The notes beneath the pieces are model-generated. The model saw nothing but the letters and a program-made list of their open reading frames with translations, was not told where the DNA came from and searched no databases. This document shows, one piece after another, positions 3,848 to 31,569 of a stretch of 64,000 nucleotides of DNA; positions within the stretch are counted from its first letter, which is position 1, and every line of letters starts with the position of its first letter. A program made the position numbers and the translations under genes. The stretch lies in sequence record NC_049851.1; one strand, given 5' to 3'.

Positions 3848-4492
3848 TTAGATATACTGGCGTTGCTTGTAGCTCAGGGGGCTTGCATACTTCGGGGCCG
3901 GGTCGAGCAGCCAAGTGCGGATTTGATCGGCGCAAGACTTGCGGAACGCAGACCGGAAATTACGCGTGCGCAGCAGCGTAACGCATGCCGGGTATTGATC
4001 GCCCATCGCATCACGCAGAGCCGCCACACGTTCGACCGCGCACCCGATTTCGGCCGCAAGCGCCGCATCGGCCGCCGCTTGCTCTGCTGCCTTGCGCGCG
4101 GCTTCCGCTTCGCGCTGGGCCTGTGCTTCCGCCGCACGCTGGGCTTTCCATGCTTCGTGCGCTGCCTGCACTTCGGGCGTCGCGTCCGGCTTAGAGCCGT
4201 AGCATGGATACGACCAGCCCCGAGTCGTCGCAAAGAGAATGTCTTCGCGACAGCCCTTTTCAGGGTTCCAGACGGCCATATACCAATCGGAATCATCGTA
4301 TCCGTTACGCTCGTAATCGAACAGGCAGAGACCTACATGCGACAGGCTAATGGTTACGTGATTCGATTCCGACATGGCACCGCCATTGTAGGCATACGAG
4401 TGTGCTTCGGCCGCGTCCGGATACCACGGCGTGTAATCGCCTTCCGCGCTGTACACCTTCCCGCCCTTTGCCTCAAGATTGATGATTGCCAT
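3848..4492 (-). CDS. hypothetical phage protein (214 aa)
   Basis: long ORF after promoter 4551; Ala/Glu coiled segment. Confidence 0.8.
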   Translation of the reverse strand: MAIINLEAKGGKVYSAEGDYTPWYPDAAEAHSYAYNGGAMSESNHVTISLSHVGLCLFDYERNGYDDSDWYMAVWNPEKGCREDILFATTRGWSYPCYGSKPDATPEVQAAHEAWKAQRAAEAQAQREAEAARKAAEQAAADAALAAEIGCAVERVAALRDAMGDQYPACVTLLRTRNFRSAFRKSCADQIRTWLLDPAPKYASPLSYKQRQYI

Positions 4493-4583
4493 TTCGTTCC
4501 CCGTCTGGGTTTGTTGAGCATGTACAAATGATAGCGGCCCCGATTGGGGCCGTCAACAATAACCCTTCACTTTATGGGGTTAT

Positions 4584-4787
4584 TCAGTAGGCGAGCAGAT
4601 CGCGCAGCGCATCGCGGTTTTTCGACATATGGTCGATGATCGCGAGCCGTTCGCGTAACCCGATATTGCGGAACGCGGGGCACCCGTCGAGCAGATCGCC
4701 CAGCAAACCGTCCCGATATTCGAGTGCCTTTTCCATGGTGTCGAATTGCTTGCCGCGCGTTACATAGACCCTCTTTTCTTCGATCAC
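4584..4787 (-). CDS. hypothetical protein
   Basis: AGGGGG RBS; stop overlaps the box. Confidence 0.7.
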   Translation of the reverse strand: MIEEKRVYVTRGKQFDTMEKALEYRDGLLGDLLDGCPAFRNIGLRERLAIIDHMSKNRDALRDLLAY

Positions 4788-4803
4788 GATAAATCCCCCT
4801 GTG

Positions 4804-4980
4804 TTATGCGAGCCAGACAGCCAGCGATGCGACGCTGGAAAGCGTGGTACGGGCCGAACGGTGCGCCTTGTGCCACGCAGCGCGAGCCGTGCGCGCCGGG
4901 TGCGCCCAGTTAGCGCGATCCGCGTAGAGTGCGCACGCCAGCTTATAGCGTTCGTCGCGCAATTGTTCGATAGTGTGCAT
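4804..4980 (-). CDS. hypothetical protein (58 aa)
   Basis: read by hand; AAGGA RBS. Confidence 0.5.
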   Translation of the reverse strand: MHTIEQLRDERYKLACALYADRANWAHPARTARAAWHKAHRSARTTLSSVASLAVWLA

Positions 4981-5026
4981 GATGGTGTTTCCTTGTGGCG
5001 GGGCGCACTGCGCCCCCCTGTCTGGT

Positions 5027-5245
5027 TTAGCTGCGATCCATGATGAAGCGCGAGACAGCGCGGGGCGTGTTCAGACGAACCGTTTCGTATTCCGTCCGGA
5101 CAGCCGCGCCGTTATAGACGCGCACGGGGTCTTGCACTTCGATAGAACCGTCCTGCATGGATGCGACCGTGTAGCCGTCACGTTCCAGAATTGCCACGTA
5201 GGGCTTCATTGCGTGGAACAGTTCGATTGCGTTAGCTTGTGGCAT
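5027..5245 (-). CDS. hypothetical protein
   Basis: GGAG RBS after promoter 5305. Confidence 0.7.
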   Translation of the reverse strand: MPQANAIELFHAMKPYVAILERDGYTVASMQDGSIEVQDPVRVYNGAAVRTEYETVRLNTPRAVSRFIMDRS

Positions 5246-5336
5246 GGTGCTGACTCCGTGCGCTGCGTTGAAAGTGATTCCATTATGGGGCGTGTTCGAC
5301 GCCCCGTCAACAGTACCCGACTAAAACGCGGGGTCT

Positions 5337-5501
5337 TTAAACCGCTGCCAGTTCATCCGCCCGGAAGTGACCGCGCACGCCGTAGCGATTTTCGCAGACA
5401 ATGAACTCACCCTCGAAGCCGATAACGCGGATCGTTGCGGCATTGACGCCCGTAAGGATGCGAGCGCGAACAGCTTGATTGAGTGCGAATGCGTGTTTCA
5501 T
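5337..5501 (-). CDS. hypothetical protein
   Basis: start moved to ATG 5501; TAA abuts the box. Confidence 0.65.
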   Translation of the reverse strand: MKHAFALNQAVRARILTGVNAATIRVIGFEGEFIVCENRYGVRGHFRADELAAV

Positions 5502-13217: not shown

Positions 13218-13364
13218 TTTCAAATCTCCGTTTGGTGAGAGTGTGCTACGTGGTTAAGTGGGTGTTGCGTGATTCGTTAAGACAGATTGTAGGGGACTAA
13301 ATTTTGTACGTCAACTAATCCCCTTCAATTTGTGGGGTCTTTTTCGCAGACCCCGGCGCGTTCG

Positions 13365-13622
13365 TTATTGCCAGCAGCGCGAGACGGTGCCAGACACGTA
13401 CATCGTGAGCGTGTTATCGTCAAACGCCCGGGAAAACTTGTAAGCCACGTCCCCCAGAAGGGCCGAACCGGTCGCCCGAATGCTCAACATTTCGTTGAAG
13501 CCTTCCGCATCGGCCCCGATCATTTCGTGAGCGGATACGCAAACGAGCACATTGATTCGACCATTTTCGTCTACGCTCGTCGTCGTGCCGTTCGGCAGGG
13601 TAATCAGTTCACGCATTTTCAT
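13365..13622 (-). CDS. hypothetical protein
   Basis: after promoter 13679. Confidence 0.7.
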   Translation of the reverse strand: MKMRELITLPNGTTTSVDENGRINVLVCVSAHEMIGADAEGFNEMLSIRATGSALLGDVAYKFSRAFDDNTLTMYVSGTVSRCWQ

Positions 13623-13738
13623 TCCCTAGTTGTGTTGCGTTAATCGATGAAGCAGATTGTAGGGCAATCATTTCCGCCCGTCAACAATACCCCTACAATT
13701 TGCGGGGTCTTTACGGCAGACCCCGGGGCCGGTGCGCG

Positions 13739-14335
13739 TTAGATCGCGCGGATGACTTGATAGCCCAGTTTCGACAGGCGGTCGATGCCCCCGACCGTAT
13801 ACAGGCTCGTATAGTGGCCGGTCTGGCGGTCGCCTGCCCAGTTCGCAAACTGCATGCCCAGTTTGTCGGCCTTGTCGCGCCACTCTGCATGGAATTCACG
13901 CATGCGCGCGTCGTCCGCGCCCTGTGCCGTCAGTGCCCTGTGAACCTTGAGGTAGGACGCGAGCATGCGTTCGGTGGACGGGTTGCGGCTGCTGTGGTCG
14001 TACAGGGTAACGCCGTCGATAACCATCCCGCGCATCGCCGCCACTACCTTGTCATAGCCGCCCCCGCCTGCCCGGCCCTGTTGGCATTGCATCGCGTCGA
14101 ACGAGCGGGCGTGTTCCGGCTTGCCGTACACGAACGTTTCGCCTTTCTTCAGGCCCCCGACCGCGCGCATGCTCCGGAACGTGGCATCGTCCGACGTGTG
14201 AAACACGTCAACCGTAACGGTTCCGCTATCAGCGTAATGTGCATGGATGGTCGCGACGTGGACACCCCGACGATTGAGGATGACCCATGCGCTGATACTG
14301 CGCCCGGCCGCCGTTTCTCGTACTTGCTTTGCCAT
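13739..14335 (-). CDS. hypothetical phage protein (GGGYDK motif)
   Basis: GGAG RBS after promoter 14408. Confidence 0.8.
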   Translation of the reverse strand: MAKQVRETAAGRSISAWVILNRRGVHVATIHAHYADSGTVTVDVFHTSDDATFRSMRAVGGLKKGETFVYGKPEHARSFDAMQCQQGRAGGGGYDKVVAAMRGMVIDGVTLYDHSSRNPSTERMLASYLKVHRALTAQGADDARMREFHAEWRDKADKLGMQFANWAGDRQTGHYTSLYTVGGIDRLSKLGYQVIRAI

Positions 14336-14446
14336 GATGCTAACTCCGTTTGGTTTGTGCTGCGTTGTGTGAATCGATGTATGAATTATGCCCGCGTCTT
14401 TTTGGCCCGTCAACAGTACCCGAGTATTTTAGTCGGGTATTGTGAC

Positions 14447-14469
14447 AAAAGAAGGGGCCCGTAGGCCCC
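14447..14469 (-). terminator. intrinsic terminator
   Basis: GGGGCC hairpin followed by a T-tract on the minus strand, next to the box. Confidence 0.7.
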
Positions 14470-14475
14470 AGCGCA

Positions 14476-15006
14476 TCAGACGATTACACCCCGATCCGTG
14501 ATCGCGTAGCATTCGCGCACGTCGTTACCCAGAAACCCGACGACGAACGTAACGCGGTCGGTGTCCTGCCCCTCCCGTTCGACGTACAGGGTGCATCGCA
14601 TTTCCCGGCCGTCGCGCGTCCACGAACCGCACGACGCGACACGCCAGCCCCGCATATCGTAGGATTCGCGCGCCTCGTCCGCGCGTTCGGTGCGCGTATC
14701 CTCGTCATACTCGAATTCCGCGTCATACGTATCCGCGAGATATTCGCGGGCTTCTTTCTCCGTCGCGTGCACCGTCCAATCGGTACGGTCGAGATAGCCC
14801 GGGGCCGTCATCCGCGCCAGCCAGCCGTCGCGCGGCTCGATTACCTCGTCGGCGTCATAGGGCTTCCCCTCCAGATAGTTCGCGAACGCTTCGACGTGCG
14901 TTCCGACCGTGCGCCCGATAACGTCGGCCGGGACAATCTCCGTCCCGTGATCGGTGTCGATGCTGAAGTATTGACCGAATTCGACATGCGGAATCATGTG
15001 TGACAT
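14476..15006 (-). CDS. acidic two-module hypothetical protein
   Basis: GAGGGG RBS after promoter 15073. Confidence 0.8.
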   Translation of the reverse strand: MSHMIPHVEFGQYFSIDTDHGTEIVPADVIGRTVGTHVEAFANYLEGKPYDADEVIEPRDGWLARMTAPGYLDRTDWTVHATEKEAREYLADTYDAEFEYDEDTRTERADEARESYDMRGWRVASCGSWTRDGREMRCTLYVEREGQDTDRVTFVVGFLGNDVRECYAITDRGVIV

Positions 15007-15104
15007 GGTGCGCCCCTCTAGGCTTGGTGTTGCGTTGAAAGTGAGACTATTGTATGCGGGCCCGTGTAGGCCCGTCAACAATAAACCCCTTGCGTGTAGG
15101 GTTA

Positions 15105-15647
15105 TTACAGAACCAGTGTTCCGTTATTGATGAGGTAAGACCCGATTGCGGCAACCCGGCCGCGCGCTTGCGCGTCCTTTCGCAGTTCGTGCAGTTCGTC
15201 GGGTTCCATGCTCGTGAGAATGCGCGCCGCCATGGTTTCGGCCGCGTGCACTTCGCGATCTTCGGATTCTGCGACAGCGCGCAGCATGTCGGCCACTTCT
15301 ACCATGTGCCACTTGGCGCGCAGCACGCCCGCGATATCCTGTTCCGTAATTTCGGGCAGATTAACGAGGTCGAGCGGATCGGCCGTGCATGAGGCAAAAA
15401 GCACGCCGTCGGCCGTGTGCAGGGTGACGCTGCGCAGACTCTGCCCCTTGAGCACGCGCCCGAGCGTGTCGGGCAGGGACGTAACGCAGACCGCATAGAG
15501 CGCGGCGTCCGGGCTCGCGACAATGACGATAGATGAATTCTTGTCCATCGCCTTTTTGAAACCCGTTTGCATCAGGTCAACGCATGCGCCTTCGCCAATC
15601 GAGCGGCCCGCATTGTGAATTTTGATTGCGTGCATGATAGTTCCCAT
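15105..15647 (-). CDS. hypothetical protein
   Basis: after promoter 15694; TAA abuts the box. Confidence 0.75.
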   Translation of the reverse strand: MGTIMHAIKIHNAGRSIGEGACVDLMQTGFKKAMDKNSSIVIVASPDAALYAVCVTSLPDTLGRVLKGQSLRSVTLHTADGVLFASCTADPLDLVNLPEITEQDIAGVLRAKWHMVEVADMLRAVAESEDREVHAAETMAARILTSMEPDELHELRKDAQARGRVAAIGSYLINNGTLVL

Positions 15648-15733
15648 GTGAGTGATGAATCGATGAGTGAATTATGCGCCCTTGTCTTCAGCCCGTCAAC
15701 AATACCTGAGTAAAGCAGTCGGGTATTGGTGCC

Positions 15734-15757
15734 AAAGAAAAGGGGCCTAGGCCCCTT
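15734..15757 (-). terminator. intrinsic terminator
   Basis: AAGGGGCC-TA-GGCCCCTT plus TTTTCTTT; the same sequence recurs at 18240-18263. Confidence 0.75.
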
Positions 15758-15760
15758 CCC

Positions 15761-16567
15761 TCAATTAACGGCAGTCGGTCGCGTGATAACCGTCTGTTTC
15801 AGGTCGTTATAGAGTTTGTGCTCTTTGACTGCGGCCCGGACGTGTACGCGGTCGCCTTCCGCGCGGAACAGTCGGCAATTGCCCTTGTGAACAACCGTAG
15901 CCCCCGACACGTCGCGCATGATCGTAAGGTAGCAGGGGCCAAACGAACCGAACGCGGCCCCCGTGTCGAGTGTGAAGATTTTTTGAATGGTCATTTCGAA
16001 TTCACGACGTTCCCCGACGGTGCCAAGGTATGCCGCGTTTTGCACCTGCTCGGCGCGGGCGCGAAGGCGCAAGACGGATGCTTGCGCGGCTTCTGCCTGT
16101 GGCCCTGTCAGGTAACCCCATTGTTCAAGCTTGCCAGCAAGCGACGACAGAAACTCGTTGTCCGCGAATTCATCGAGCATGCCCGCGAGCCCCGGATATT
16201 CGGCGTCGAATGCTGCGCGCTTGTCGGCCTTCGCGGCTTCGCGTTCGGCGTCCCGGGCCGCCTGTTCGGCCGCGCGCTTTTCCTGCGCCTTAGCTTGGCG
16301 CTTGGTTGCGGACGCAACCAGCTTTGCGAGGCGTTCGCCCGTGTAGACTTTCGTCAGGGCCGGGGTGCCTTGACCCGAACCCCCGCACTCGTAACACGTG
16401 TAACCCGTGTACGCCCATGCGTTCGAACGCCCGGCCCCGCCGCAACGATGGCACTTGCGGGGTTTGTAGAACGAGCCCGAGCCCTTAGCCGGGTCATAGT
16501 TCGTCGGAATCAGGCCCGCGTATGCCGTGCCGTCGCGGTAGAAAAGAGCGGGCTTTGCTTGTTCCAT
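15761..16567 (-). CDS. protein with a CxxCxGxG zinc-finger N-terminus and a probable OB-fold C-terminus
   Basis: CHRCGGAG and CYECGGSG repeats; beta-rich C-terminus YLGTVGERREF...QTVITRP. Confidence 0.7.
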   Translation of the reverse strand: MEQAKPALFYRDGTAYAGLIPTNYDPAKGSGSFYKPRKCHRCGGAGRSNAWAYTGYTCYECGGSGQGTPALTKVYTGERLAKLVASATKRQAKAQEKRAAEQAARDAEREAAKADKRAAFDAEYPGLAGMLDEFADNEFLSSLAGKLEQWGYLTGPQAEAAQASVLRLRARAEQVQNAAYLGTVGERREFEMTIQKIFTLDTGAAFGSFGPCYLTIMRDVSGATVVHKGNCRLFRAEGDRVHVRAAVKEHKLYNDLKQTVITRPTAVN

Positions 16568-16653
16568 CGTTGCACCTGTTTGGTTAGTCGATGGACAAAT
16601 AATAACGGGCCCCGAAAGGCCCGTCAACAATACCCGACTAAATCGCGGGGTCT

Positions 16654-17343
16654 TTACAGCACGTCCTTAAATTCGTCGTTCAGTCGCTTACGCTGGGCGC
16701 GCAGTTTCTCGATATGGTTACGCGTTTCTTCGCGCCAGATACCGGGGGCATTGCGCACGATCCAAAGGTCGCGCACACGCTGTTCCGTTTCTTCGATATC
16801 GGATTCGAGCCGTCGGGCCGCTTGCCATTTCGCGTCGTATTCCCGTTCGTCTTCCGCGTAGACGCACGCATGCGAATCGGCGTCCGCTGCGGCAGCGCGG
16901 TCACTGTCATAGACAGTCGTGAACACGACGTGTCCATCGTTGTCTGACGTGGTGTAACCCGCGAGATAACGGCCGTGCGTCAGGCGCACAAAGAACGGAC
17001 GCGCTACCTCCGTTCCGTCTTCGTCCGTGAACCATCCTTTGTGGCTGACGTAAGTGCGTCCCGAGCGCGGGTTTTCCGTTTCGTCCAGATAGCACACGCG
17101 GCCGGGCAGCGCGTCATCGTCAAATGTCGAATAGATATCGATCTTGCGGCCGTATTCCGTGTTGTAGCCCGCGCGCAGGCCCGAGTCGTTCGACAGGAAA
17201 TTTCCGAACCGGGCCGAACGCCAATCGATGAGTCGGCCGCCCTTCCCAGCGTTCACCTTGGCATTGTGGGATTCCACGTAGCCGCGAAGGTACGCGAGCC
17301 GCTTCCGTGCGCCAATGCGAAGGTTGCGATAGGTAGTGTTCAT
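16654..17343 (-). CDS. hypothetical phage protein (229 aa)
   Basis: after promoter 17411; TAA abuts the box. Confidence 0.8.
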   Translation of the reverse strand: MNTTYRNLRIGARKRLAYLRGYVESHNAKVNAGKGGRLIDWRSARFGNFLSNDSGLRAGYNTEYGRKIDIYSTFDDDALPGRVCYLDETENPRSGRTYVSHKGWFTDEDGTEVARPFFVRLTHGRYLAGYTTSDNDGHVVFTTVYDSDRAAAADADSHACVYAEDEREYDAKWQAARRLESDIEETEQRVRDLWIVRNAPGIWREETRNHIEKLRAQRKRLNDEFKDVL

Positions 17344-17477
17344 AATCGAATCCGTTTAGTTAATCCCGCGTCGCGCGGTATGAAAAGGATTGTACGCGTC
17401 TTATTCCCTGCGTCAACAATAACCCCGCGCAATGAGGGGTTATTGTTGAAGCACTCCGTAGAGTGCGGGCCGCGTCG

Positions 17478-17675
17478 TTAGCTCAGGCGATACGGCTGCG
17501 GGCGCAAAATCAGGTGCGAGCCGAACGCCATAACCAGATAGCCCGGGCCATACAGCAGAGCCTTAGCGGCCCCGAAAACGAGCGGCGGGGCCTGCACAAA
17601 GCACGTCGAGTAAACTGCAAACCCGACGACGATCAACAGCAGATTGAGCGCGTTCTCACGAATCCAGTATTTCAT
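17478..17675 (-). CDS. small two-helix membrane protein
   Basis: AAGGGG RBS; two hydrophobic segments. Confidence 0.65.
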   Translation of the reverse strand: MKYWIRENALNLLLIVVGFAVYSTCFVQAPPLVFGAAKALLYGPGYLVMAFGSHLILRPQPYRLS

Positions 17676-17685
17676 TTCGTTCCCC

Positions 17686-18144
17686 TTAGTTGAAGTAATC
17701 GCGGGCCTGCGCCTTCGCGAAGCGTTCAAGCGACGCATTACCGCGCAGCTTAATAGTTACGTCGCTGTCGCGCATGCACTCACGTGCGAGCGTGTCCCGC
17801 TTGCCGATCCGCACAACGTCGGATTGTTCAGTGTCGTATTGACCGTAAGCGACGCAGGCATCGATGAGAGTGGCCCAGTATTCATCAGTTTCGTATTCCG
17901 GGGCATCGTCTTCGCGACCGATTGCCGACAACACGTCGCGTTCGCGTGGCGTCCCGTGATCGGGGAACGTGACAGACAGCCGCTCAATCCAAAACTCGTT
18001 GTCCGCTAACCCGGCTTCAGAGCACGGGGTAATGCGCAGCACGTTTGCATAACCCCAGCCCCGGCGCGCACGGTCGAGTTCGTAGAAGTAGCCGCCATAC
18101 TCGATATTGATATCGCCGTGATAAAGAACCTGCGTGCGTTTCAT
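17686..18144 (-). CDS. acidic hypothetical protein
   Basis: GGGG RBS after promoter 18200. Confidence 0.75.
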   Translation of the reverse strand: MKRTQVLYHGDINIEYGGYFYELDRARRGWGYANVLRITPCSEAGLADNEFWIERLSVTFPDHGTPRERDVLSAIGREDDAPEYETDEYWATLIDACVAYGQYDTEQSDVVRIGKRDTLARECMRDSDVTIKLRGNASLERFAKAQARDYFN

Positions 18145-18239
18145 GATGTGCCCCGTTAGGCGTTGTCGATGTGTGAAGTATGCCCGGGCCCGCGAGGCGC
18201 GTCAACAGTACCTGAGTATTTTAGTCGGGTATTGCTGCC

Positions 18240-18263
18240 AAAGAAAAGGGGCCTAGGCCCCTT
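18240..18263 (-). terminator. intrinsic terminator
   Basis: identical to 15734-15757. Confidence 0.75.
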
Positions 18264-25050: not shown

Positions 25051-25343
25051 GACTTGAGCCCCCGCACGAAACGGCAGACACCCATGTACTGACGGCGACA
25101 ATCGGCCAGCCACGCGGCCCATGCTTCGGGGTATTCCCGGCCCCAGCCGATATAGAACCCGATCAAATCCTGATCGCGCCTTTGATTGCAGGACAGGGCG
25201 TCCGACAACGCGAATTTATCCACGTCGAGCCGTTCCAGTTGATCGCGGATCGAATCGACCAACATGCACCCCGAGCCACGCACCCATGCATAAAACTCGA
25301 ATTCGTTGATCGTGTCATCGGCAAACTTCACTTGGTTTTCCAT
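25047..25343 (-). CDS. hypothetical protein
   Basis: AAGGGG RBS after promoter 25402. Confidence 0.7.
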   Translation of the reverse strand: MENQVKFADDTINEFEFYAWVRGSGCMLVDSIRDQLERLDVDKFALSDALSCNQRRDQDLIGFYIGWGREYPEAWAAWLADCRRQYMGVCRFVRGLKS

Positions 25344-25430
25344 TTCGTTCCCCTTCCGGGTTCGTTGAGCGTGAAACCAGTATAGACGGGCGCGCGGCGC
25401 ACGTCAACAATAACCCCGTGCTCTATGGGG

Positions 25431-25853
25431 TTAAATCAAAATCATTTCCGTGTAACCCAGCGTCCGGGCAATTGCCAGCAGCGCATCATTACCCGCGCCC
25501 TGTTCGCACGACTCAAACGCGATTGGTGCGCCCGCGTCGTCGCGTATATCGATCCCTGCCGACACTAGGGCCCGGTCGAACGCGAGCCCGAACGATTCAC
25601 GCCCCGCGCTCGTCTTCGCCACGCCGTAACCTGACGTGGTAGCGGCCCCGCAACGAACCCACAGCGACGCATAGAGGTTCGTTGCGGACGTGCTGCGCGA
25701 TGCCCAGTAACGCAATTCGCACACGTGTTCAAGCTTACCCGTTACCGGGTTAAGGGCAACGAGGGAAACGGTGCGGATGCGTTCCTTCGTCCCGTCGTGC
25801 TGCTGCGCGTTATCCTGTTCACCCTTAAACGTTACTTGCATACGTTGCCTCAT
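25431..25853 (-). CDS. hypothetical phage protein
   Basis: ATGA overlap; TAA inside the box. Confidence 0.7.
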   Translation of the reverse strand: MRQRMQVTFKGEQDNAQQHDGTKERIRTVSLVALNPVTGKLEHVCELRYWASRSTSATNLYASLWVRCGAATTSGYGVAKTSAGRESFGLAFDRALVSAGIDIRDDAGAPIAFESCEQGAGNDALLAIARTLGYTEMILI

Positions 25854-26353
25854 TCCGCCGCATTCTTGCCAAGGTGTTCCGCGAGCGGTTCACCATTTTT
25901 CATCAGCGTAACCGACTCCCCGGCCGCGCGCCCCGTCCCCTCGTCGGACGTGATGACCCATGCATCATAGGCTGCATACGCGGCCGTTCGGTCGTCGCCT
26001 TCGTACACGGTGCCGACGTTACCGACGATGACGAGATAGCCCGTGTTCGTCGGGTTCGCGATGCCTTCAATGACTTCGATAGCTTGCTCGCGCGTGCTGT
26101 AGCGGTGGAACTCGCCCAGCGTTTCCACGTTGCCGGTTTCCCCGTCGATCTTGCGCACCGAAAATTTCGTGATCCCCGACGGGTTCGTTTCCTGCGAAAC
26201 GAAATAGTACGAGCCGAAAATCAGCCAGCCCCGGGCCGGAAGTCGGGTCTTGAAAAACTTCATTGCATCAGCATCGAACCAGTGCCCGTTAGGATTCTTT
26301 TCGGCGTAGTGCGCGCGAATCGTGGACATGGTGACGGTCTTAGCGTTTTTCAT
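25850..26353 (-). CDS. two-module hypothetical protein (GHWFD-x3-MKFF motif)
   Basis: AAGGGG RBS after promoter 26413. Confidence 0.75.
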   Translation of the reverse strand: MKNAKTVTMSTIRAHYAEKNPNGHWFDADAMKFFKTRLPARGWLIFGSYYFVSQETNPSGITKFSVRKIDGETGNVETLGEFHRYSTREQAIEVIEGIANPTNTGYLVIVGNVGTVYEGDDRTAAYAAYDAWVITSDEGTGRAAGESVTLMKNGEPLAEHLGKNAAE

Positions 26354-26451
26354 TTGGTGCCCCTTTAGGCGTCGTGATTGGATGACTGAATTATGCGCGG
26401 GCCCGTCTGGCGTGTCAACAATAACCCCAAAATTTTTATGGTTATTCAGGC

Positions 26452-26476
26452 AAAGAAAAAGCCCCGGCTGGGGCTT
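26452..26476 (-). terminator. intrinsic terminator
   Basis: AGCCCC-AGCC-GGGGCT followed by TTTTCTTT on the minus strand. Confidence 0.7.
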
Positions 26477-26627
26477 AGAGGATGCGGGCCGCCTGTATGG
26501 CCGCCGCTCGCGTTCGGGCCGTCCCGTGAGACTGGCCCCGCACGTCAAAAATTTCCCACAAGCGACGGTCGCCTACACGCTGCACGTAGCCGCGTAGCGT
26601 CCCCCGCTCGTCGTAAACCGGGGTCAT
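26475..26627 (-). CDS. hypothetical protein (50 aa)
   Basis: ATGA overlap; ends at the terminator. Confidence 0.55.
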   Translation of the reverse strand: MTPVYDERGTLRGYVQRVGDRRLWEIFDVRGQSHGTARTRAAAIQAARIL

Positions 26628-27301
26628 GATCCGCGCGTGTCGAGCACTTCCGCCGCTTCCGTAATCGTAAGGTTCGGCACGCCGTCCACCATCCACGTTT
26701 CGACCGTCTGCCCGGCAATCCGGCGCAGGTAGACGGAAACCGGGACATTACGCAACCGGCCATGTCGCGCGGCCCCGAACGCTGCGAGTTCGTCCGATTT
26801 TGCGGCAAACCGAGCGACAATGGATTCTGCGAAGTCAACCAGTTCACGGGCTGCCGCAAGCGGGATAGCCTTGTGCGGTTGCGGGGCCGCGACTCGCGCA
26901 ACCTCGTTTTCTGCGTCGCGTTGCTGGGTGAACGTGCCCCGTCCGTCAACGTACCAGTTACACACGATCCAATCACGGGCCCGCGTATGGATCGCGCAGC
27001 ACGTGACAGGCACGCCCCCGATATCTGCGGTTTCCGCATGATCGTCTTTCGACGTGCGGGCGATCTCGCGCGCTTCGTTCGCGAGTTTCGACAGTTCGGC
27101 CGAAATTTGATCGATGGTCATTACTTGTCCGTTCAACATGGCTTCGAATTCCATTTCATTTTCGAGAAAATACAGTTCGGGGGTGCCCGCGATAAGATGC
27201 CGGGCCGCCCGCGCTTGCTCGGCACGCCATTCCGGATTATCGGGGAATGCGCGCCGGGCCCGGGCTAGTTCGATCCGCAAGTGTAGCGCGAGCGGTGACA
27301 T
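26624..27301 (-). CDS. hypothetical protein (225 aa)
   Basis: TAATG overlap. Confidence 0.75.
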   Translation of the reverse strand: MSPLALHLRIELARARRAFPDNPEWRAEQARAARHLIAGTPELYFLENEMEFEAMLNGQVMTIDQISAELSKLANEAREIARTSKDDHAETADIGGVPVTCCAIHTRARDWIVCNWYVDGRGTFTQQRDAENEVARVAAPQPHKAIPLAAARELVDFAESIVARFAAKSDELAAFGAARHGRLRNVPVSVYLRRIAGQTVETWMVDGVPNLTITEAAEVLDTRGS

Positions 27302-27786
27302 TATGCGACGAGCCGCTTAACGGGTTCAACGCTGCGCGGGTGATAAACCCAGCGCAGTTCAGCCAGCAAGGGCGCGTATTCTTCCGGGGTTGCCAGCTTC
27401 AAATCGCGGCCCAGACTGCGCGACACTTCCCCATGCTGCCCCGTGTGCATGTAGGACATCACGTTACCCGGGTTGCAGTCTTTCGCGCTGTTACAGAAAA
27501 ACGCGATTACGTAACCCTCGCGAAACTTGCGGAACACGACACGCAACGCGGGCGGCGCAAACTTCGCGGCCCCGTAGCGCTGCGCGTCTTCGGACAGGGC
27601 GCGCACGCCCGAGGGGTCATGTGCATCCCGCGAGCCGTGAACGTCGACCAGATCGCCGCTGCGCTTATCGAATTGAAACGTGATCGGAACGCGGGGGCCA
27701 AACCCGGGCCATTTGCGCGCGAACGCTTCAACGTCTGCGGTCGTGCACTGCACGGTAAAGAATGCCCCATTATCATATGCTCGCAT
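27301..27786 (-). CDS. two-module hypothetical protein (VVFRKF...YMHTGQH motif)
   Basis: GAGG RBS after promoter 27851. Confidence 0.75.
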   Translation of the reverse strand: MRAYDNGAFFTVQCTTADVEAFARKWPGFGPRVPITFQFDKRSGDLVDVHGSRDAHDPSGVRALSEDAQRYGAAKFAPPALRVVFRKFREGYVIAFFCNSAKDCNPGNVMSYMHTGQHGEVSRSLGRDLKLATPEEYAPLLAELRWVYHPRSVEPVKRLVA

Positions 27787-27882
27787 GGTTGCCTCTAGGC
27801 GGTTGTGCTGCTGTTGAAAGTGAAACCAGTATAGGACGGGGCCGCCGCCCCGTCAACAATACCAGACTACCGCGAGGGGTCT

Positions 27883-28254
27883 TTATTCCGTGCCCCGCAA
27901 GCGACGTACAATTTCCGCGTGCGACAGGCCCGACATAAGACGGTCAATTTCCGCTTGCTCGTCCGCCTGCCGTCGCTCGTCTTCTGCTACCTGCCTAGCG
28001 AGTTCTGCGCGCCACTCTTTCAGGGCCCGCGCGCCCTTTTCCGTGCTGCGCGGATCAACCGACAGATAGAGCGTGACTTCGCGCCCCTCCCGGTCAACGA
28101 AAACGGGCGTGCCGCTATTTTTCACCACTACCGTGAAATGCGACTGAACCAGACGGTTTACGGTGTCGGCATCGATAGCCCCGCCAAACGATCCGCCCAC
28201 AACCTTCCGCGTGTTGTCGCTGTAGAGGCGCGTGTGATAGCTGATATTGCGCAT
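27883..28254 (-). CDS. hypothetical protein
   Basis: after promoter 28311; TAA abuts the box. Confidence 0.75.
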   Translation of the reverse strand: MRNISYHTRLYSDNTRKVVGGSFGGAIDADTVNRLVQSHFTVVVKNSGTPVFVDREGREVTLYLSVDPRSTEKGARALKEWRAELARQVAEDERRQADEQAEIDRLMSGLSHAEIVRRLRGTE

Positions 28255-28687: not shown

Positions 28688-28912
28688 TCAGTGATCGCGT
28701 TTAACGCTAGTGACGTTGCCGTTATGCTTGCGCACTTCCCAATTGATGCCGTAGTGGCTGAACCCGGTAACACGGTGCGCGCCCGCGTATCGGCCTTCCG
28801 CCACGTCGAACGAATGATCTTTCGTGATCGTGCCGTAACGCCTGCATTCGGCCGCTACCTCGTCAAGACTGCCTGCCTTGAATGCCGTGATGAGTTCTGC
28901 TTTGGTCAACAT
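28688..28912 (-). CDS. hypothetical protein
   Basis: first ORF after promoter 28968. Confidence 0.7.
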   Translation of the reverse strand: MLTKAELITAFKAGSLDEVAAECRRYGTITKDHSFDVAEGRYAGAHRVTGFSHYGINWEVRKHNGNVTSVKRDH

Positions 28913-28999
28913 GGTTTGTCGTTCGGTTCGTTAGAGTGACGCCATTGTATAGGGCAAGTGGGCGCGCGTGCAATACCCCTAAAAAGTTTTTGGTTTTTG

Positions 29000-29027
29000 T
29001 TGACGCGGCCGGGGAAGCGTGTAGAAT
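29000..29027 (+). promoter_or_regulatory. sigma70 promoter (rightward 1)
   Basis: TTGACG-N16-TAGAAT; shares a box with leftward promoter 28968. Confidence 0.7.
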
Positions 29028-29128
29028 GGGAACCGGTGAGCAACACGGGCAAACGCAGCCGCGACGCGGTGGGGAACCCGGAGCCCGGCCCCTGCCCGGT
29101 CGCGCAAACGTTTGCGCCGGGTGTCCGG

Positions 29129-29185
29129 AGTACCCGACAAAAACGCTAGGGTACTATTGACGCGACCGCGAATAGGGCGCACAAT
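29129..29185 (+). promoter_or_regulatory. 27-bp box plus sigma70 promoter (rightward 2)
   Basis: AGTACCC-N13-GGGTACT, then TTGACG-N17-CACAAT. Confidence 0.75.
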
Positions 29186-29260
29186 TCGATTCATGGTGAA
29201 CGCGACGCGGACACCGAACCCGGCCGATTCGGCCAATGTCGAAAAAAGTGAAAAAACTTG

Positions 29261-29289
29261 TTGACATGCTGCAAATCCGGGTTCATAAT
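29261..29289 (+). promoter_or_regulatory. sigma70 promoter (rightward 3)
   Basis: TTGACA-N17-CATAAT with an A-rich UP region. Confidence 0.75.
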
Positions 29290-29376
29290 GCTTTCCATGG
29301 TGACGCGACAGCGACGCCCCAGCCCCGGACACGGGGTCATCCCGGGGCCCGCGACAGCGACACCCGCGAAAATCGC

Positions 29377-29405
29377 TTGACGTGCAGGGCCGGGGCCGCT
29401 ATAGT
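29377..29405 (+). promoter_or_regulatory. sigma70 promoter (rightward 4)
   Basis: TTGACG-N17-TATAGT. Confidence 0.7.
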
Positions 29406-29565
29406 GGCGTCACTGGGCCGAAACGGCTCAGGGCAGGGCGGGGGCCTATCCCGTCTGACGCACTGGAGCCCGTATTGACGATCAAGCACACGACCGCGCA
29501 CAGCAGCACCAGCACGACCGTAGCACCCAGCGTCACCCGCGCTCGCGTCTTCTAACGCGACACAT

Positions 29566-29607
29566 AGCCTCCCCACGCCCTGAATAAGGGATAGGGAGGC
29601 TTTTCTT
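29566..29607 (+). terminator. intrinsic terminator candidate
   Basis: AGCCTCCC...GGGAGGCT followed by TTTCTT. Confidence 0.55.
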
Positions 29608-29707
29608 CGTCCATTTCCCCTTGACATCAAGTTGCTCAATTTTTAGGCAGTCCGAAAATCCCGGCAGGGCAGGGGAGGGCGCTTGCCCAGAAAACCGCCC
29701 TTCCCCA

Positions 29708-30099
29708 CAAAAACTTTTGAGGATTCCGAAATTCTTTCGAAGCACCCTTCCACAAGTTTTTCCTCGGGCAAAAAGTTTCGAAGCCAGTCAAAAACTTTGA
29801 CCTCTAAAGCAAAAATAAAAAAGTTTGGACGCATTCAAAGGTTTTGTCAAAAGATTTTGGCGAAATAAAAAGATTTTAGAGAAGCCCATCTAAAAAGTTT
29901 CAAACTACCAAAATCTTTTGAGTTGCCTCAAAACTTTAAATTTCCCACCTAAAGATTTTCAGTCCGCATCAAAAACTTTTGACGGATTTCAAAAACTTCA
30001 ATACGCAGTCAAAATCTTTGGAACGCACCAAAAACTTTTGACGAGTTCAAAAACTTTTGACCGCACCGGTAAGTTTTACCTGTCTCAAAAAGTTTTTGG
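29708..30099. repeat. array of about 20 quasi-palindromic A/T-tract repeats (CAAAAACTTTTGA consensus), period about 20 bp
   Basis: copies start near 29708, 29727, 29751, 29769, 29789, 29817, 29836, 29848, 29866, 29891, 29909, 29929, 29950, 29970, 29990, 30010, 30029, 30048, 30070, 30086. Confidence 0.85.
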
Positions 30100-30203
30100 T
30101 GGCGGCGAAATAATTCGTAACACACTGTTACAATATTTTCGTTGGTACAAATATTTTTCCATGCTATAGTACGCGCACACCAACGGAAATAGGCGTACGA
30201 ATC

Positions 30204-31175
30204 ATGAGCGGTATATACAAGATAAGCTTCAACGGCAACAACAAGCGCGACTGCTACATAGGGCAGGCGCAGGATTTCACTGCGCGTATGTACAACCACA
30301 GGCACCATCTACGCCGGGGGACTCACTTTGCACCCAAGCTACAGCGGGCTTACGACGAGAACGGGCACGAGAACATGCGCGTCGAGATTCTTGAGTTGTG
30401 CGAAGTAGAAGTACTCACCCAGCGCGAGCAGCATTATCTTGATACCATTAAGCCGCGCTACAACCCCACGCTGATTGCATCAGAACCTCCCATGCGCGGA
30501 AAAGCGCATAGCGACGACGCTAAGCAAAGAATCAGCGACGCGGTGCGGAAGTTCAGCCACAAGCAAGAACTGGCGATTGTCAGCAGTCACATAGGGCTTG
30601 GATTCAGCACTACAACCATCGCACTTCAGTTCGGCTGCTCAGAGCCTACAATACGCACAATCCTGCGCAAGCACGGAATCGATACGGGGGCGTCTCGCAG
30701 GCCCAAAGGTAGAGCTAAGAAGGCAGGCCGTAAGGTCAAATTTGACGCGGCTCAGGAGCAGGCCATCGCGCGCAGCTACCAGTCGGGTAAAAGCACTGCT
30801 GAGGTGGCTCAAGAATTTGGCTGCTCCCAACCTACGGTGGTGAAGATGCTGGATAAACTAGGCATTGAGCGCAGGCGTGGCCAGTTCAACGAAACCGAAC
30901 AACAGGACATCGTTCGCCAGTACAAGAATGGCAAGACCACAGAGGACATTGCCGCACAGTATGGATGCAATCACTCCACCATCGGGGACGAGTTGCGCCG
31001 GGCTGGCGTCGAGTTGCGAGGCCGAGGCCGCAAGCGTTTGCTCACGGATAAGCAAGAACGTCAAGCCCTTGCGCTTCGTGACAAAGGCAGGTCAGTCAGT
31101 GAAGTGGCGGCCAAGTTTGGATGCAGTCCGCAGGCGATGCGCAACATACTCAACAAACACCGGGAGTCAGCATGA
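30204..31175 (+). CDS. GIY-YIG endonuclease with a NUMOD3-like linker and four tandem HTH repeats
   Basis: SGIYKI...CYIGQA...R...EQHYLDTIKPRYN; PMRGKAHSDDAKQRIS linker; four repeats of the type E-x2-I-x3-Y-x2-G-x-(S/T)-x3-IA-x2-FGC. Confidence 0.85.
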   Translation: MSGIYKISFNGNNKRDCYIGQAQDFTARMYNHRHHLRRGTHFAPKLQRAYDENGHENMRVEILELCEVEVLTQREQHYLDTIKPRYNPTLIASEPPMRGKAHSDDAKQRISDAVRKFSHKQELAIVSSHIGLGFSTTTIALQFGCSEPTIRTILRKHGIDTGASRRPKGRAKKAGRKVKFDAAQEQAIARSYQSGKSTAEVAQEFGCSQPTVVKMLDKLGIERRRGQFNETEQQDIVRQYKNGKTTEDIAAQYGCNHSTIGDELRRAGVELRGRGRKRLLTDKQERQALALRDKGRSVSEVAAKFGCSPQAMRNILNKHRESA

Positions 31176-31471
31176 ACGTTATCATCCACGATCAAGATTT
31201 TCTTGACTACCCGATCATGGTAGTCGACACCGAGCTTCTGGAGAACACGCTGGACCCCGAGACCACGGCGTTCGAGCGCGCGCAGGAGGCGCTGGCGCGC
31301 ACGGAGGTGGTGCTACTCGTCAAGCCCGAGCACATAGGACGCGTGTTGTCCAAAGTCCACAAACATGTGACAGCCGTCCACAACACGGTACAGCTTGAGG
31401 GAGACACGGAAGCCCGGCTCCAGCGCGCGCTGGCCTCGGTGGGGCTCGATCTCCATAGCTCCACCTACTGA
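31172..31471 (+). CDS. hypothetical protein
   Basis: ATGA overlap with the endonuclease; GGGAG RBS. Confidence 0.7.
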   Translation: MNVIIHDQDFLDYPIMVVDTELLENTLDPETTAFERAQEALARTEVVLLVKPEHIGRVLSKVHKHVTAVHNTVQLEGDTEARLQRALASVGLDLHSSTY

Positions 31472-31483
31472 CCATTGCACCAA

Positions 31484-31566
31484 AAGAAAAACCCCACACG
31501 CCTTTTGGTATGTGGGGTTTATTTTAGTCCGCGCAAAACAAAAAACCGAGCGCCGGGCCCGGTTCT
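31484..31566. terminator. two hairpin terminators between convergent gene blocks
   Basis: AACCCCACA...TGTGGGGTT and AACCG...CGGTT hairpins with A/T tails. Confidence 0.6.
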
Positions 31567-31569
31567 TGA

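What the first reader, a model, noticed from the sequence alone, without database searches (positions are those of the whole stretch)
29708..30099. About 20 phased A/T-tract repeats at two-helical-turn spacing: candidate replication origin or packaging/entry site
An ORF-free, strongly AT-rich 400-bp stretch in a GC-rich genome carries quasi-palindromic CAAAA(A/T)(C/G)TTTTGA units about every 19-21 bp, separated by variable GC-richer linkers. Established knowledge: iteron arrays and phased A-tracts mark initiator-binding origins and terminase-binding bent DNA. It lies where the early block and the late block meet.
Basis: partly seen in the sequence, partly recalled or inferred. Interest (0 to 1): 0.7.

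Follow-up and report, generated by a model that had tools for sequence, protein, structure and literature searches.

The report
Phased repeat array at phage early/late boundary
A jumbo Burkholderia phage carries a unique 400-base stretch of about 20 evenly spaced A/T-rich repeats exactly where its early genes meet its tail genes; it looks like a docking platform for a DNA-binding protein, possibly a replication start or DNA-entry control site, but its job cannot be settled without experiments.

Summary
The window is the first 64 kb of Burkholderia phage BcepSauron (262,653 bp). Positions 29708-30098 carry 19-20 units of (T)CAAAA-NN-TTTTGA with a 20.0-bp period. This is the most AT-rich spot of the genome, and the motif occurs nowhere else in it.

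The array lies in a 1.3-kb unannotated gap at the boundary between a sigma70-promoter-dense arm of small early genes and the promoter-poor tail genes. Four tandem consensus promoters and a terminator sit on its left. A promoter, an inserted GIY-YIG homing endonuclease and the orphan gene 071 sit on its right.

One sister lineage from metagenomes has the same module with 19 units, but the unit has diverged to AAAA(A)STTCACC in alternating orientation. More distant relatives, including RSL1, lack both the array and gene 071.

- **Against a classical origin:** no GC-skew turn, no DnaA boxes, no initiator gene.
- **Against packaging or partition:** terminase lies 115 kb away, and no ParA, ParB or tubulin was found.
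- **Against intrinsic bending:** predicted curvature is ordinary.

Best reading: a transcription-shielded platform of protein-binding sites, most likely a lineage-specific origin resembling T4 oriE (about 0.3). A T5-like injection stop or a regulatory role remain open. The scan's earlier notes held nothing on this element.

The parts
29708..30098 (.). Array of 19-20 units, consensus (T)CAAAA-NN-TTTTGA, period 20.0 bp, 35% GC; mostly one orientation with about 5 inverted units
29000..29405 (+). Four tandem consensus sigma70-type promoters (29000-29027, 29157-29185, 29261-29289, 29377-29405), all pointing at the array; the hexamers are conserved in the sister lineage
   Evidence: conservation
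28980..28992 (.). Lone copy of the motif just upstream of the -35 of the first promoter. It sits where an UP element would. It is A/T-rich in the sister lineage but is not that lineage's own motif
29475..29555 (+). Candidate 26-codon reading frame (TTG start, GGAG 6 nt upstream). The frame, its start and its ...RA/VF stop context are kept in the sister lineage (27 codons) despite indels
   Evidence: read (inference)
29566..29610 (+). Strong hairpin followed by CUUUUCUU, an intrinsic terminator between the promoters and the array. The hairpin is kept in the sister lineage with one compensatory pair, but the U-tract is not
   Evidence: -26.6 kcal/mol, z = -4.6
29663..29681 (+). Conserved G-run element GGCAGGGCAGGGGAGGGCG just before the first unit (GGCAGGGTAGGGTAGGGCG in the sister lineage)
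   Evidence: a G-quadruplex or R-loop role is inference only
30142..30170 (+). Sigma70-type promoter with extended -10 at the right edge of the array, reading away from it into genes 070-071
30204..31175 (+). Gene 070, a GIY-YIG homing endonuclease with several HTH domains. It is an insertion, absent from the sister lineage
31172..31471 (+). Gene 071, a 99-aa orphan protein. It is the only gene that co-occurs with the array (57% identity in the sister lineage, no other homologue)
   Evidence: model and fold search
31541..31567 (-). Terminator-like hairpin that ends the leftward tail-gene transcripts before they reach gene 071 and the array

Best explanation
The array is a cis-acting DNA element, not a gene and not an RNA. 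It offers about 19-20 evenly spaced binding sites, sharing the core AAAA(A)-S-TT, for a sequence-specific DNA-binding protein that is still unidentified and is probably phage-encoded.

Occupying sites every 20-21 bp would build one long nucleoprotein filament or wrap on the least stable 400 bp of the genome. Terminators on both sides, and a promoter that reads away from it, keep transcription out of the array.

The most likely use (about 0.3) is a lineage-specific early replication origin of the T4 oriE / iteron kind. The four tandem host-type promoters and the G-rich segment upstream would supply activating transcription or a primer RNA, and the bound array would open the A/T-rich DNA.

What is shown: the repeats, their phasing and uniqueness, the position, the flanking signals, and conservation of architecture in a sister lineage.

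What is inferred: protein binding, the identity of the binder, and any role in replication.

The confidence given (0.3) is for the origin reading; the broader protein-platform reading I put at about 0.7.
For: - The array is unique in the genome and strictly periodic.
- It is the lowest-GC window of the genome.
- The sister lineage keeps the same position, the same length (~400 bp), the same unit number (19) and the core AAAA(A)STT. The rest of the unit and the orientation pattern have changed, as expected if sites co-evolve with a binder.
- The flanking promoter cluster stays alignable between the two lineages, with its hexamers conserved, while the array columns no longer align well (whole-alignment mean column identity 77%).
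- Four tandem promoters point at the array, with a terminator in between. A terminator also lies on the far side and a promoter exits from the array's right edge.
- The array sits at a switch of transcription class: 24 strong promoters in 0-30 kb and none in 30-60 kb.
- Intrinsic curvature is ordinary, so sequence-specific binding explains the phasing better than bending does.
Against: - GC and AT skew show no turn at the array. The skew minimum lies at 104.8-111.8 kb, at a divergent gap beside helicase, polymerase and primase genes.
- No DnaA boxes are present.
- No initiator-like or DNA-binding gene lies next to the array. Gene 071 models as a small flavodoxin-like alpha/beta domain. Of 52 proteins of the early arm, only one matched a Pfam family, DUF7447.
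- Relatives at 50-73% identity in the neighbouring gene 074, and three complete genomes including RSL1, have no such array anywhere. It is therefore not needed by this kind of replisome.
- Twenty units is far more than typical iteron origins carry.
- The terminator between the promoters and the array argues against simple read-in priming.
- Identity of the array between BcepSauron and BcepSaruman is uninformative. It falls in a 2-kb identical tract centred on the homing endonuclease.
Confidence: 0.3

Rival explanations
1. Injection-stop or entry-pause site, like the iss region of phage T5. The left ~29.7 kb (11% of the genome, the early arm) enters first. A membrane-associated or early phage protein binds the array and halts DNA transfer until early proteins have acted.
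For: [quoted passage not shown]
- That arm is specific to this clade together with the array.
- In an independent 229,672-bp NCBI contig of the sister lineage the array lies about 25.5 kb, also 11%, from a contig end.
- The T5 iss lies in a 1.6-kb untranslated region full of direct and inverted repeats at 7.9% of the genome. That region is conserved more than its neighbouring genes, and in some phages a homing endonuclease is inserted between repeat regions (10.1101/866236).
- Relatives are reported to have linear genomes with defined ends (10.64898/2026.10.21.760668).
Against: - Two-step injection is not known for this phage group.
- Which end enters first is unknown.
- The right end (240-262 kb) also carries promoter-dense small genes, so one-sided staged entry is not obviously needed.
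- The T5 iss has a different make-up, with large inverted repeats and DnaA boxes; there are no DnaA boxes here.
- The resemblance is positional only.
Confidence: 0.15
2. Transcription-control element for the early promoter hub. The array could be a silencing or insulating nucleoprotein block, or a docking platform for RNA polymerase alpha subunits or a host nucleoid protein. It would set the activity of the four tandem promoters and of the promoter of gene 071, and keep early and late transcription apart.
For: - The array is flanked by promoters on both sides.
- In the sister lineage the last unit ends 2-3 bp before the TTGACA of the gene 071 promoter.
- The unit AAAAASTTTT resembles the A/T-rich UP-element half-site (from memory).
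- A lone copy sits at the UP position of the first promoter.
- As the most AT-rich DNA of a phage in a high-GC host, it is the expected first target of H-NS/MvaT-type silencers (inference).
Against: - Operators normally overlap promoters, but the array starts about 300 bp beyond the fourth promoter and behind a terminator.
- Twenty sites to control a 99-aa orphan gene is out of proportion.
- A fixed motif and strict spacing point to a specific binder rather than a general A/T-binding protein.
- The lone upstream copy is not the sister lineage's own motif.
Confidence: 0.2
3. Centromere-like partition site or terminase-binding packaging site.
For: Arrays of many phased, often palindromic sites are typical of centromeres and maintenance elements: F sopC with 12 units, R1 parC with 10, pSK41 with 20-bp repeats, EBV FR with about 20 (all from memory). 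Some pac sites also contain phased repeats.
Against: - No ParB, ParA or tubulin-type gene is present in the genome. The only AAA_31 hit is a sub-threshold P-loop match inside a helicase gene.
- The phage is listed as an isolate on B. cenocepacia with no plasmid-prophage signs.
- Terminase is 115 kb away.
- Genome ends in this group are reported elsewhere.
- Two metagenome contigs on either side of the array have equal depth, about 190 and 185.
Confidence: 0.05
4. Fast-evolving satellite DNA with no function of its own, carried along with the homing endonuclease and gene 071.
For: - Close relatives in public runs are 95-99% alike in the flanks but unalignable inside the array.
- An 80-bp (four-unit) length difference exists between two contigs of the sister lineage.
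- The array is absent from more distant relatives.
- A homing endonuclease sits next to it, with a 2-kb co-converted tract.
Against: - Unit number (19 against 19-20), total length, position and core motif are all kept across lineages whose neighbouring proteins are only 57-78% identical, while the unit sequence has turned over.
- The sister lineage has the array without the endonuclease.
- Terminators shield the array on both sides.
Confidence: 0.1

Closest known systems
Phage T4 oriE iteron cluster (with early genes repEA/repEB)
   Same: A cluster of evenly spaced short repeats in a non-coding stretch, dependent on a host-type early promoter, near a switch in transcription, with repeats kept only in close relatives. 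In T4 too, the link between the repeats and origin activity is unproven (PMC3016281).
   Different: T4 repeats are 12-nt direct repeats and fewer in number; here there are 19-20 quasi-palindromic units at 20 bp. No RepEB-like gene was identified. There are no replication data for this phage.
Iteron origins of plasmids and lambdoid phages (R6K gamma, P1 oriR, lambda ori with O-protein sites)
   Same: Initiator sites spaced about two helical turns apart next to easily melted DNA. Lambda iterons are themselves inverted repeats bound by dimers (from memory; R6K is cited in PMC3016281).
   Different: These usually have 3-9 iterons, a separate A/T-rich unwinding element, an adjacent or enclosing initiator gene, and often DnaA or IHF sites. 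None of these was found here.
Phage T5 injection stop signal (iss) region
   Same: A large untranslated, repeat-rich region at the inner boundary of the first-entering early arm (7.9% in T5, 11% here). It is better conserved than the neighbouring early genes, and a homing endonuclease is inserted nearby in some members (10.1101/866236).
   Different: T5 has nested inverted repeats, palindromes and 8 DnaA boxes rather than one regular 20-unit array. Staged injection is not documented for Sarumanvirus.
Centromere and maintenance repeat arrays (F sopC, R1 parC, pSK41 parC, EBV oriP family of repeats)
   Same: Ten to twenty phased, often palindromic protein sites that assemble one large complex (from memory).
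   Different: No partition ATPase, ParB or tubulin gene in the genome; the phage is not known to persist as a plasmid.
Intrinsically curved DNA from phased A-tracts
   Same: A4-5 and T3-4 runs recur with a helical-multiple period.
   Different: There is one A5-N-T4 unit per 20 bp. A wedge model that reproduces the classic A5N5, A4T4 and T4A4 results gives the array an end-to-end/contour ratio of 0.946 over 120 bp (6.5th percentile of the genome) and 0.94 over 380 bp (median).

Membership tests
Iteron-type replication origin | Cluster of repeated initiator-binding sites at about two-turn spacing | tested here: met
   19-20 units, period 20.0 bp; binding itself was not tested
Iteron-type replication origin | Cognate initiator gene adjacent to or enclosing the iterons | tested here: not met
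   Neighbours are a homing endonuclease (an insertion) and the orphan gene 071, which has no Pfam match and a flavodoxin-like model. Of 52 early-arm proteins, only one matched a Pfam family, DUF7447
Iteron-type replication origin | Separate A/T-rich unwinding element and DnaA/IHF sites | tested here: not met
   No DnaA-box-like site within 27-33 kb. The A/T richness is in the repeats themselves. IHF was checked only by eye
Iteron-type replication origin | Strand-composition (GC skew) turning point at the origin | tested here: not met
   Cumulative skew declines through the array; the extremes are at 104.8 kb and 233.8 kb. The test is weak, because skew in phages follows gene direction
Iteron-type replication origin | Replication starts there | not testable with these tools
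   Needs marker-frequency or 2-D gel data. Contig depths in one metagenome are equal on both sides, which is uninformative
T4 oriE-like origin | Evenly spaced repeats served by an early (host-type) promoter near a transcription switch | tested here: met
   description of oriE in PMC3016281
T5-type injection stop signal | Large untranslated repeat region at the inner edge of the first-entering, early-gene arm | tested here: inconclusive
   The position fits, but which end enters first and whether entry is staged are unknown
T5-type injection stop signal | Paired large inverted repeats with ordered DnaA boxes | tested here: not met
   No DnaA boxes. A genome self-comparison finds no partner repeat of the array elsewhere
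Plasmid/phage centromere (parC, sopC, tubC) | Adaptor and motor genes (ParB/ParR with ParA/ParM/TubZ) in the genome, usually adjacent | tested here: not met
   ParB_N: none. Tubulin: none. AAA_31: only a sub-threshold hit in a helicase gene. ParM and RHH ParR families were not searched genome-wide
pac/cos packaging site | Lies at or near the genome ends or the terminase genes | tested here: not met
   Terminase is at 144.5-146.7 kb. The array is 29.7 kb from the end of the record. The true ends were not mapped here
Intrinsically bent DNA | Predicted macroscopic curvature well above the genome background | tested here: not met

The most novel reading that the evidence does not exclude
The array is the stop or gate of a two-step genome delivery in a jumbo phage. 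The clade-specific 25-30 kb early arm enters and is expressed first, and a protein bound to the 20-site array holds back the remaining 89% of the genome until host take-over is complete. This would be a T5-like strategy evolved independently with a quite different DNA signal.
Probability: 0.15. Interest if true: 0.75.

Novelty: new variant of a known kind. Interest (0 to 1): 0.5.

Why it matters
Sarumanvirus-type jumbo phages have just been reported to have an unprecedented linear genome architecture. How these genomes replicate, enter the cell and are packaged is an open question (10.64898/2026.10.21.760668). This array is the single most conspicuous non-coding signal in the BcepSauron genome, and it sits exactly at the junction between the clade-specific early arm and the conserved core. 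That gives experimenters a precise 400-bp target for three things: finding an origin or an entry-control site, fishing out an unknown DNA-binding protein, and testing plasmid-borne copies as decoys against the phage. It also shows how such a site can keep its number, spacing and position while its sequence turns over.

Tried and rejected
- **Gene 071 as the binder.** It is the only gene that co-occurs with the array. It has no Pfam match. The AlphaFold model (pLDDT 85) is a small alpha/beta domain with only weak, generic fold matches and no HTH or RHH. It has no homologue among 5.8 billion clustered proteins or 1.84 billion representatives beyond the sister lineage. The ESM Atlas look-alikes were uninformative. 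I hold it as unlikely, not excluded.
- **Gene 069 as the binder.** Rejected: it differs strongly between BcepSauron and BcepSaruman although their arrays are identical.
- **The homing endonuclease as the binder.** Rejected: the sister lineage has the array without it.
- **An RNA reading.** Rfam and ARAGORN find nothing in the window. Hairpins predicted in the sister array are not conserved in BcepSauron.
- **Searches for the array elsewhere.**
  - Phage and plasmid collections gave only BcepSauron and BcepSaruman.
  - Two-unit pattern hits in IMG/VR were chance matches in A/T-rich contigs, a coding repeat, or a small three-site operator.
  - Three-unit hits in bacterial genomes are unrelated intergenic arrays of unknown function.
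  - Exact searches with a conserved 25-mer from the promoter cluster found nothing in IMG/VR or JGI metagenome contigs.
- **The 229,672-bp NCBI contig of the sister lineage** could not be opened as a whole.
- **Comparison with BcepSaruman** gives no covariation, because the two are identical over 29131-31135 apart from one base.
- **Earlier notes of this scan** held nothing relevant.
- **Complex prediction** was not used, because no candidate binder emerged.

Full report
**Identity of the window.** The window is the first 64 kb of Burkholderia phage BcepSauron (MK552141, 262,653 bp, genus Sarumanvirus, host B. cenocepacia). The GenBank record annotates nothing between gene 069 (28688-28912, - strand) and gene 070 (30204-31175, + strand).

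**The observation.** Between 29708 and 30098 I count 19 units, plus one degenerate unit, of a quasi-palindrome.
- The best copies read GTCAAAA-AC-TTTTGAC. Median start-to-start spacing is 20 bp.
- A Fourier analysis of the A/T pattern peaks at exactly 20.0 bp, with power 5.4 against at most 2.4 in 500 shuffles. No other 400-bp window of the genome has such a periodicity.
- CAAAAACTTTTGA with up to one mismatch occurs seven times in the genome, all between 28980 and 30060.
- 33 of the genome's 56 A4-N-T3-type sites lie in these 406 bp.
- AAAANWTTT gives 19 matches in the window against 2.0 expected.
- The array is 35% GC. It contains the lowest-GC 300-bp window of the genome (33.3%; the next lowest is 43.7%; the genome mean is 58.1%).

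**Surroundings.** To the left lie genes 013-069, all on the - strand, small and mostly unnamed. Only one of 52 scanned proteins matched a Pfam family. To the right, after two + strand genes, come - strand tail genes including tube and sheath.
- Strong sigma70-type promoters (at least 10 of 12 consensus positions) number 24 on the - strand in 0-30 kb and none in 30-60 kb. There are 11 more at 240-260 kb. The array thus sits exactly on the boundary between a host-polymerase-transcribed early arm and late genes.
- Inside the 1.3-kb gap, four consensus promoters on the + strand (29000, 29157, 29261, 29377) all point at the array.
- They are followed by a candidate 26-codon frame (29475-29555) and a strong hairpin with a U-tract (29566-29610; -26.6 kcal/mol, z = -4.6).
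- Next come a conserved TTGACA box and a G-run element (29663-29681), and then the array.
- At the right edge of the array a promoter with an extended -10 (30142-30170) reads away from it into gene 070 and gene 071.
- A terminator on the - strand (31541-31567) stops the late tail transcripts before they reach this region.

The array therefore looks shielded from transcription on both sides. That fits a function at the DNA level.

**Relatives.**
- *BcepSaruman.* It is identical to BcepSauron from 29131 to 31135 apart from one base, while the flanks differ at the usual few percent. The tract is centred on gene 070, a GIY-YIG homing endonuclease with several HTH domains. It is best explained by endonuclease-driven co-conversion, so it says nothing about selection on the array.
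- *Close relatives in public runs.* Four public runs hold close relatives. Their contigs match the flanks at 95-99%, stop or become unalignable inside the array, and resume near 30.9-31.0 kb. The loose ends still show CAAAAAG-type units.
- *The sister lineage.* The neighbouring gene 074 has a very large family in metagenomic jumbo phages. Only one lineage, at 78% identity in gene 074 and found on hundreds of contigs, has the same module. There the promoter hexamers, the small frame, the hairpin (with one compensatory pair) and the G-run element are conserved. A ~400-bp array of 19 units follows, and then directly a promoter and the gene 071 homologue (57% identity). There is no endonuclease.
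- *The sister lineage's unit.* The unit is now AAAA(A)-S-TTCACC(C), in strictly alternating orientation over most of the array, with about 21 bp per unit and about 41 bp per pair. Only the core AAAA(A)STT is shared. One contig has four units fewer.
- *More distant relatives.* Those at 50-73% identity in gene 074 run straight from gene 074 into packed small genes. Sixty-four IMG/VR loci show no comparable array. Three complete genomes, including Ralstonia phage RSL1, have none anywhere.
- *Gene 071 and the early arm.* Gene 071 has no homologue outside the two lineages. Of the 37 early-arm proteins tested, 14 have homologues in the sister lineage's locus and only two give weak hits in one distant genome.

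The array is thus part of a clade-specific module at the junction of an accessory early arm and the conserved core. In an NCBI contig of the sister lineage it lies about 25.5 kb (11%) from a contig end, against 29.7 kb (11%) in BcepSauron.

**What it is not.**
- *Not strongly curved DNA.* A wedge model reproduces the classic curved A5N5 and A4T4 and the straight T4A4. It gives the array ratios at the 6.5th percentile (120 bp) and at the median (380 bp) of the genome.
- *Not at a skew turning point.* The cumulative GC-skew extremes are at 104.8 and 233.8 kb, and the AT-skew minimum is at 111.8 kb. That position is a divergent gap beside helicase, polymerase and primase genes. It is also the second most AT-rich window and the most curved 120-bp window of the genome.
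- *No DnaA boxes*.
- *Terminase is 115 kb away*.
- *No ParB, ParA or tubulin genes*.
- *Not a known RNA*.
- *No binder identified.* Gene 071 models confidently as a small alpha/beta domain without a DNA-binding fold.

**Interpretation.** Number, spacing, length and position are kept while the unit sequence and orientation turn over. Together with the shielding from transcription, this points to a platform of about 20 sites for a sequence-specific DNA-binding protein that co-evolves with them. I put this broad reading at roughly 0.7.

Which process the platform serves is open.
- *Origin (about 0.3).* I rank this first because the anatomy matches what is described for T4 oriE: evenly spaced repeats, an early-mode promoter, a position near a transcription switch, and conservation only in close relatives (PMC3016281). 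The array is also the easiest DNA in the genome to open. The missing initiator, the missing skew signal, the intervening terminator and the absence from relatives count against it.
- *T5-like injection stop (about 0.15).* This fits the position and the untranslated, repeat-rich character of the T5 iss region (10.1101/866236). It also fits the report that relatives have linear genomes with fixed ends (10.64898/2026.10.21.760668). It is untested.
- *Regulatory or insulating role at the early promoter hub (about 0.2).*
- *Functionless satellite (about 0.1).*
- *Partition or packaging (about 0.05).*

**Novelty.** I found no description of this element. The record has no feature there, and the five papers that mention BcepSauron do not discuss it. 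It is a new variant of the known class of phased protein-site arrays, with an unusual copy number, an unusual position and a documented turnover of the unit.

Noticed in passing
window 29131-31135: BcepSauron and BcepSaruman are identical here apart from one base (30118), while the flanks differ by 2-7% or more and gene 069 is largely different. The tract is centred on the GIY-YIG homing endonuclease gene 070, which looks like co-conversion by homing.
   Followed up: partly
window 29000-29610: Four tandem consensus sigma70 promoters 104-157 bp apart drive only a short region. It holds a candidate 26-codon TTG-start frame (29475-29555, GGAG 6 nt upstream) and a strong terminator hairpin. The frame length (27 codons), its start and its end are kept in the sister lineage. 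It could be an abundant early small RNA, a micro-protein or a leader.
   Followed up: partly
window 29663-29681 and 29441-29458: Two G-run elements (GGCAGGGCAGGGGAGGGCG and GGGCAGGGCGGGGG) are conserved in the sister lineage with changes only between the G-runs. They are possible G-quadruplex or R-loop-promoting sequences.
   Followed up: no
genome 111656-112352 (outside the window): A 700-bp divergent gap between a helicase gene and rightward small genes. It is the second most AT-rich window and the most curved 120-bp window of the genome. It has A/T tracts phased at 10-11 bp upstream of a consensus promoter, and it lies at the AT-skew minimum and near the GC-skew minimum. It is the better skew-based candidate for an origin.
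   Followed up: partly
window 13262-18261, 4486-5349 and 25337-27894: Several ~100-bp intergenic sequences of the early arm are repeated at 77-83% identity (for example 14367-14469, 15652-15755 and 18166-18261). They are probably repeated promoter or terminator cassettes.
   Followed up: no
window 1-29000, and genome 240-262 kb: Strong sigma70-type promoters cluster at both ends of the record (24 and 11, all on the - strand) and are nearly absent from the structural regions. Of the early-arm proteins tested, 14 have homologues in the sister lineage and almost none in three distant complete genomes.
   Followed up: partly
genome about 210500-210560 (outside the window): About ten tandem copies of CCCACG inside gene 323, a coding hexanucleotide repeat.
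   Followed up: no
L148:6240-6450, L150:6140-6390, L149:930-1040: Unrelated bacterial metagenome-assembled genomes (Bacteroidales, Bacteroidetes, a cyanobacterium) carry intergenic arrays of 5-10 CAAAA-NN-TTTTG palindromes at 21-22 bp spacing. No replication or partition gene was recognised among the neighbours scanned. Function unknown.
   Followed up: partly
L035 / L041 / L042 (sister lineage): The sister phage's proteins are indexed in more than 900 blocks of the public collections, some labelled as E. coli or Salmonella assemblies. It is a very widespread phage, or possibly a contaminant.
   Followed up: no
L068:5760-5850: A distant relative has five perfect 19-bp tandem repeats (TCCTTATCTATTTTGAAA) about 3 kb downstream of its gene 074 homologue. 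It is a small iteron-like cluster unrelated in sequence to the array.
   Followed up: no
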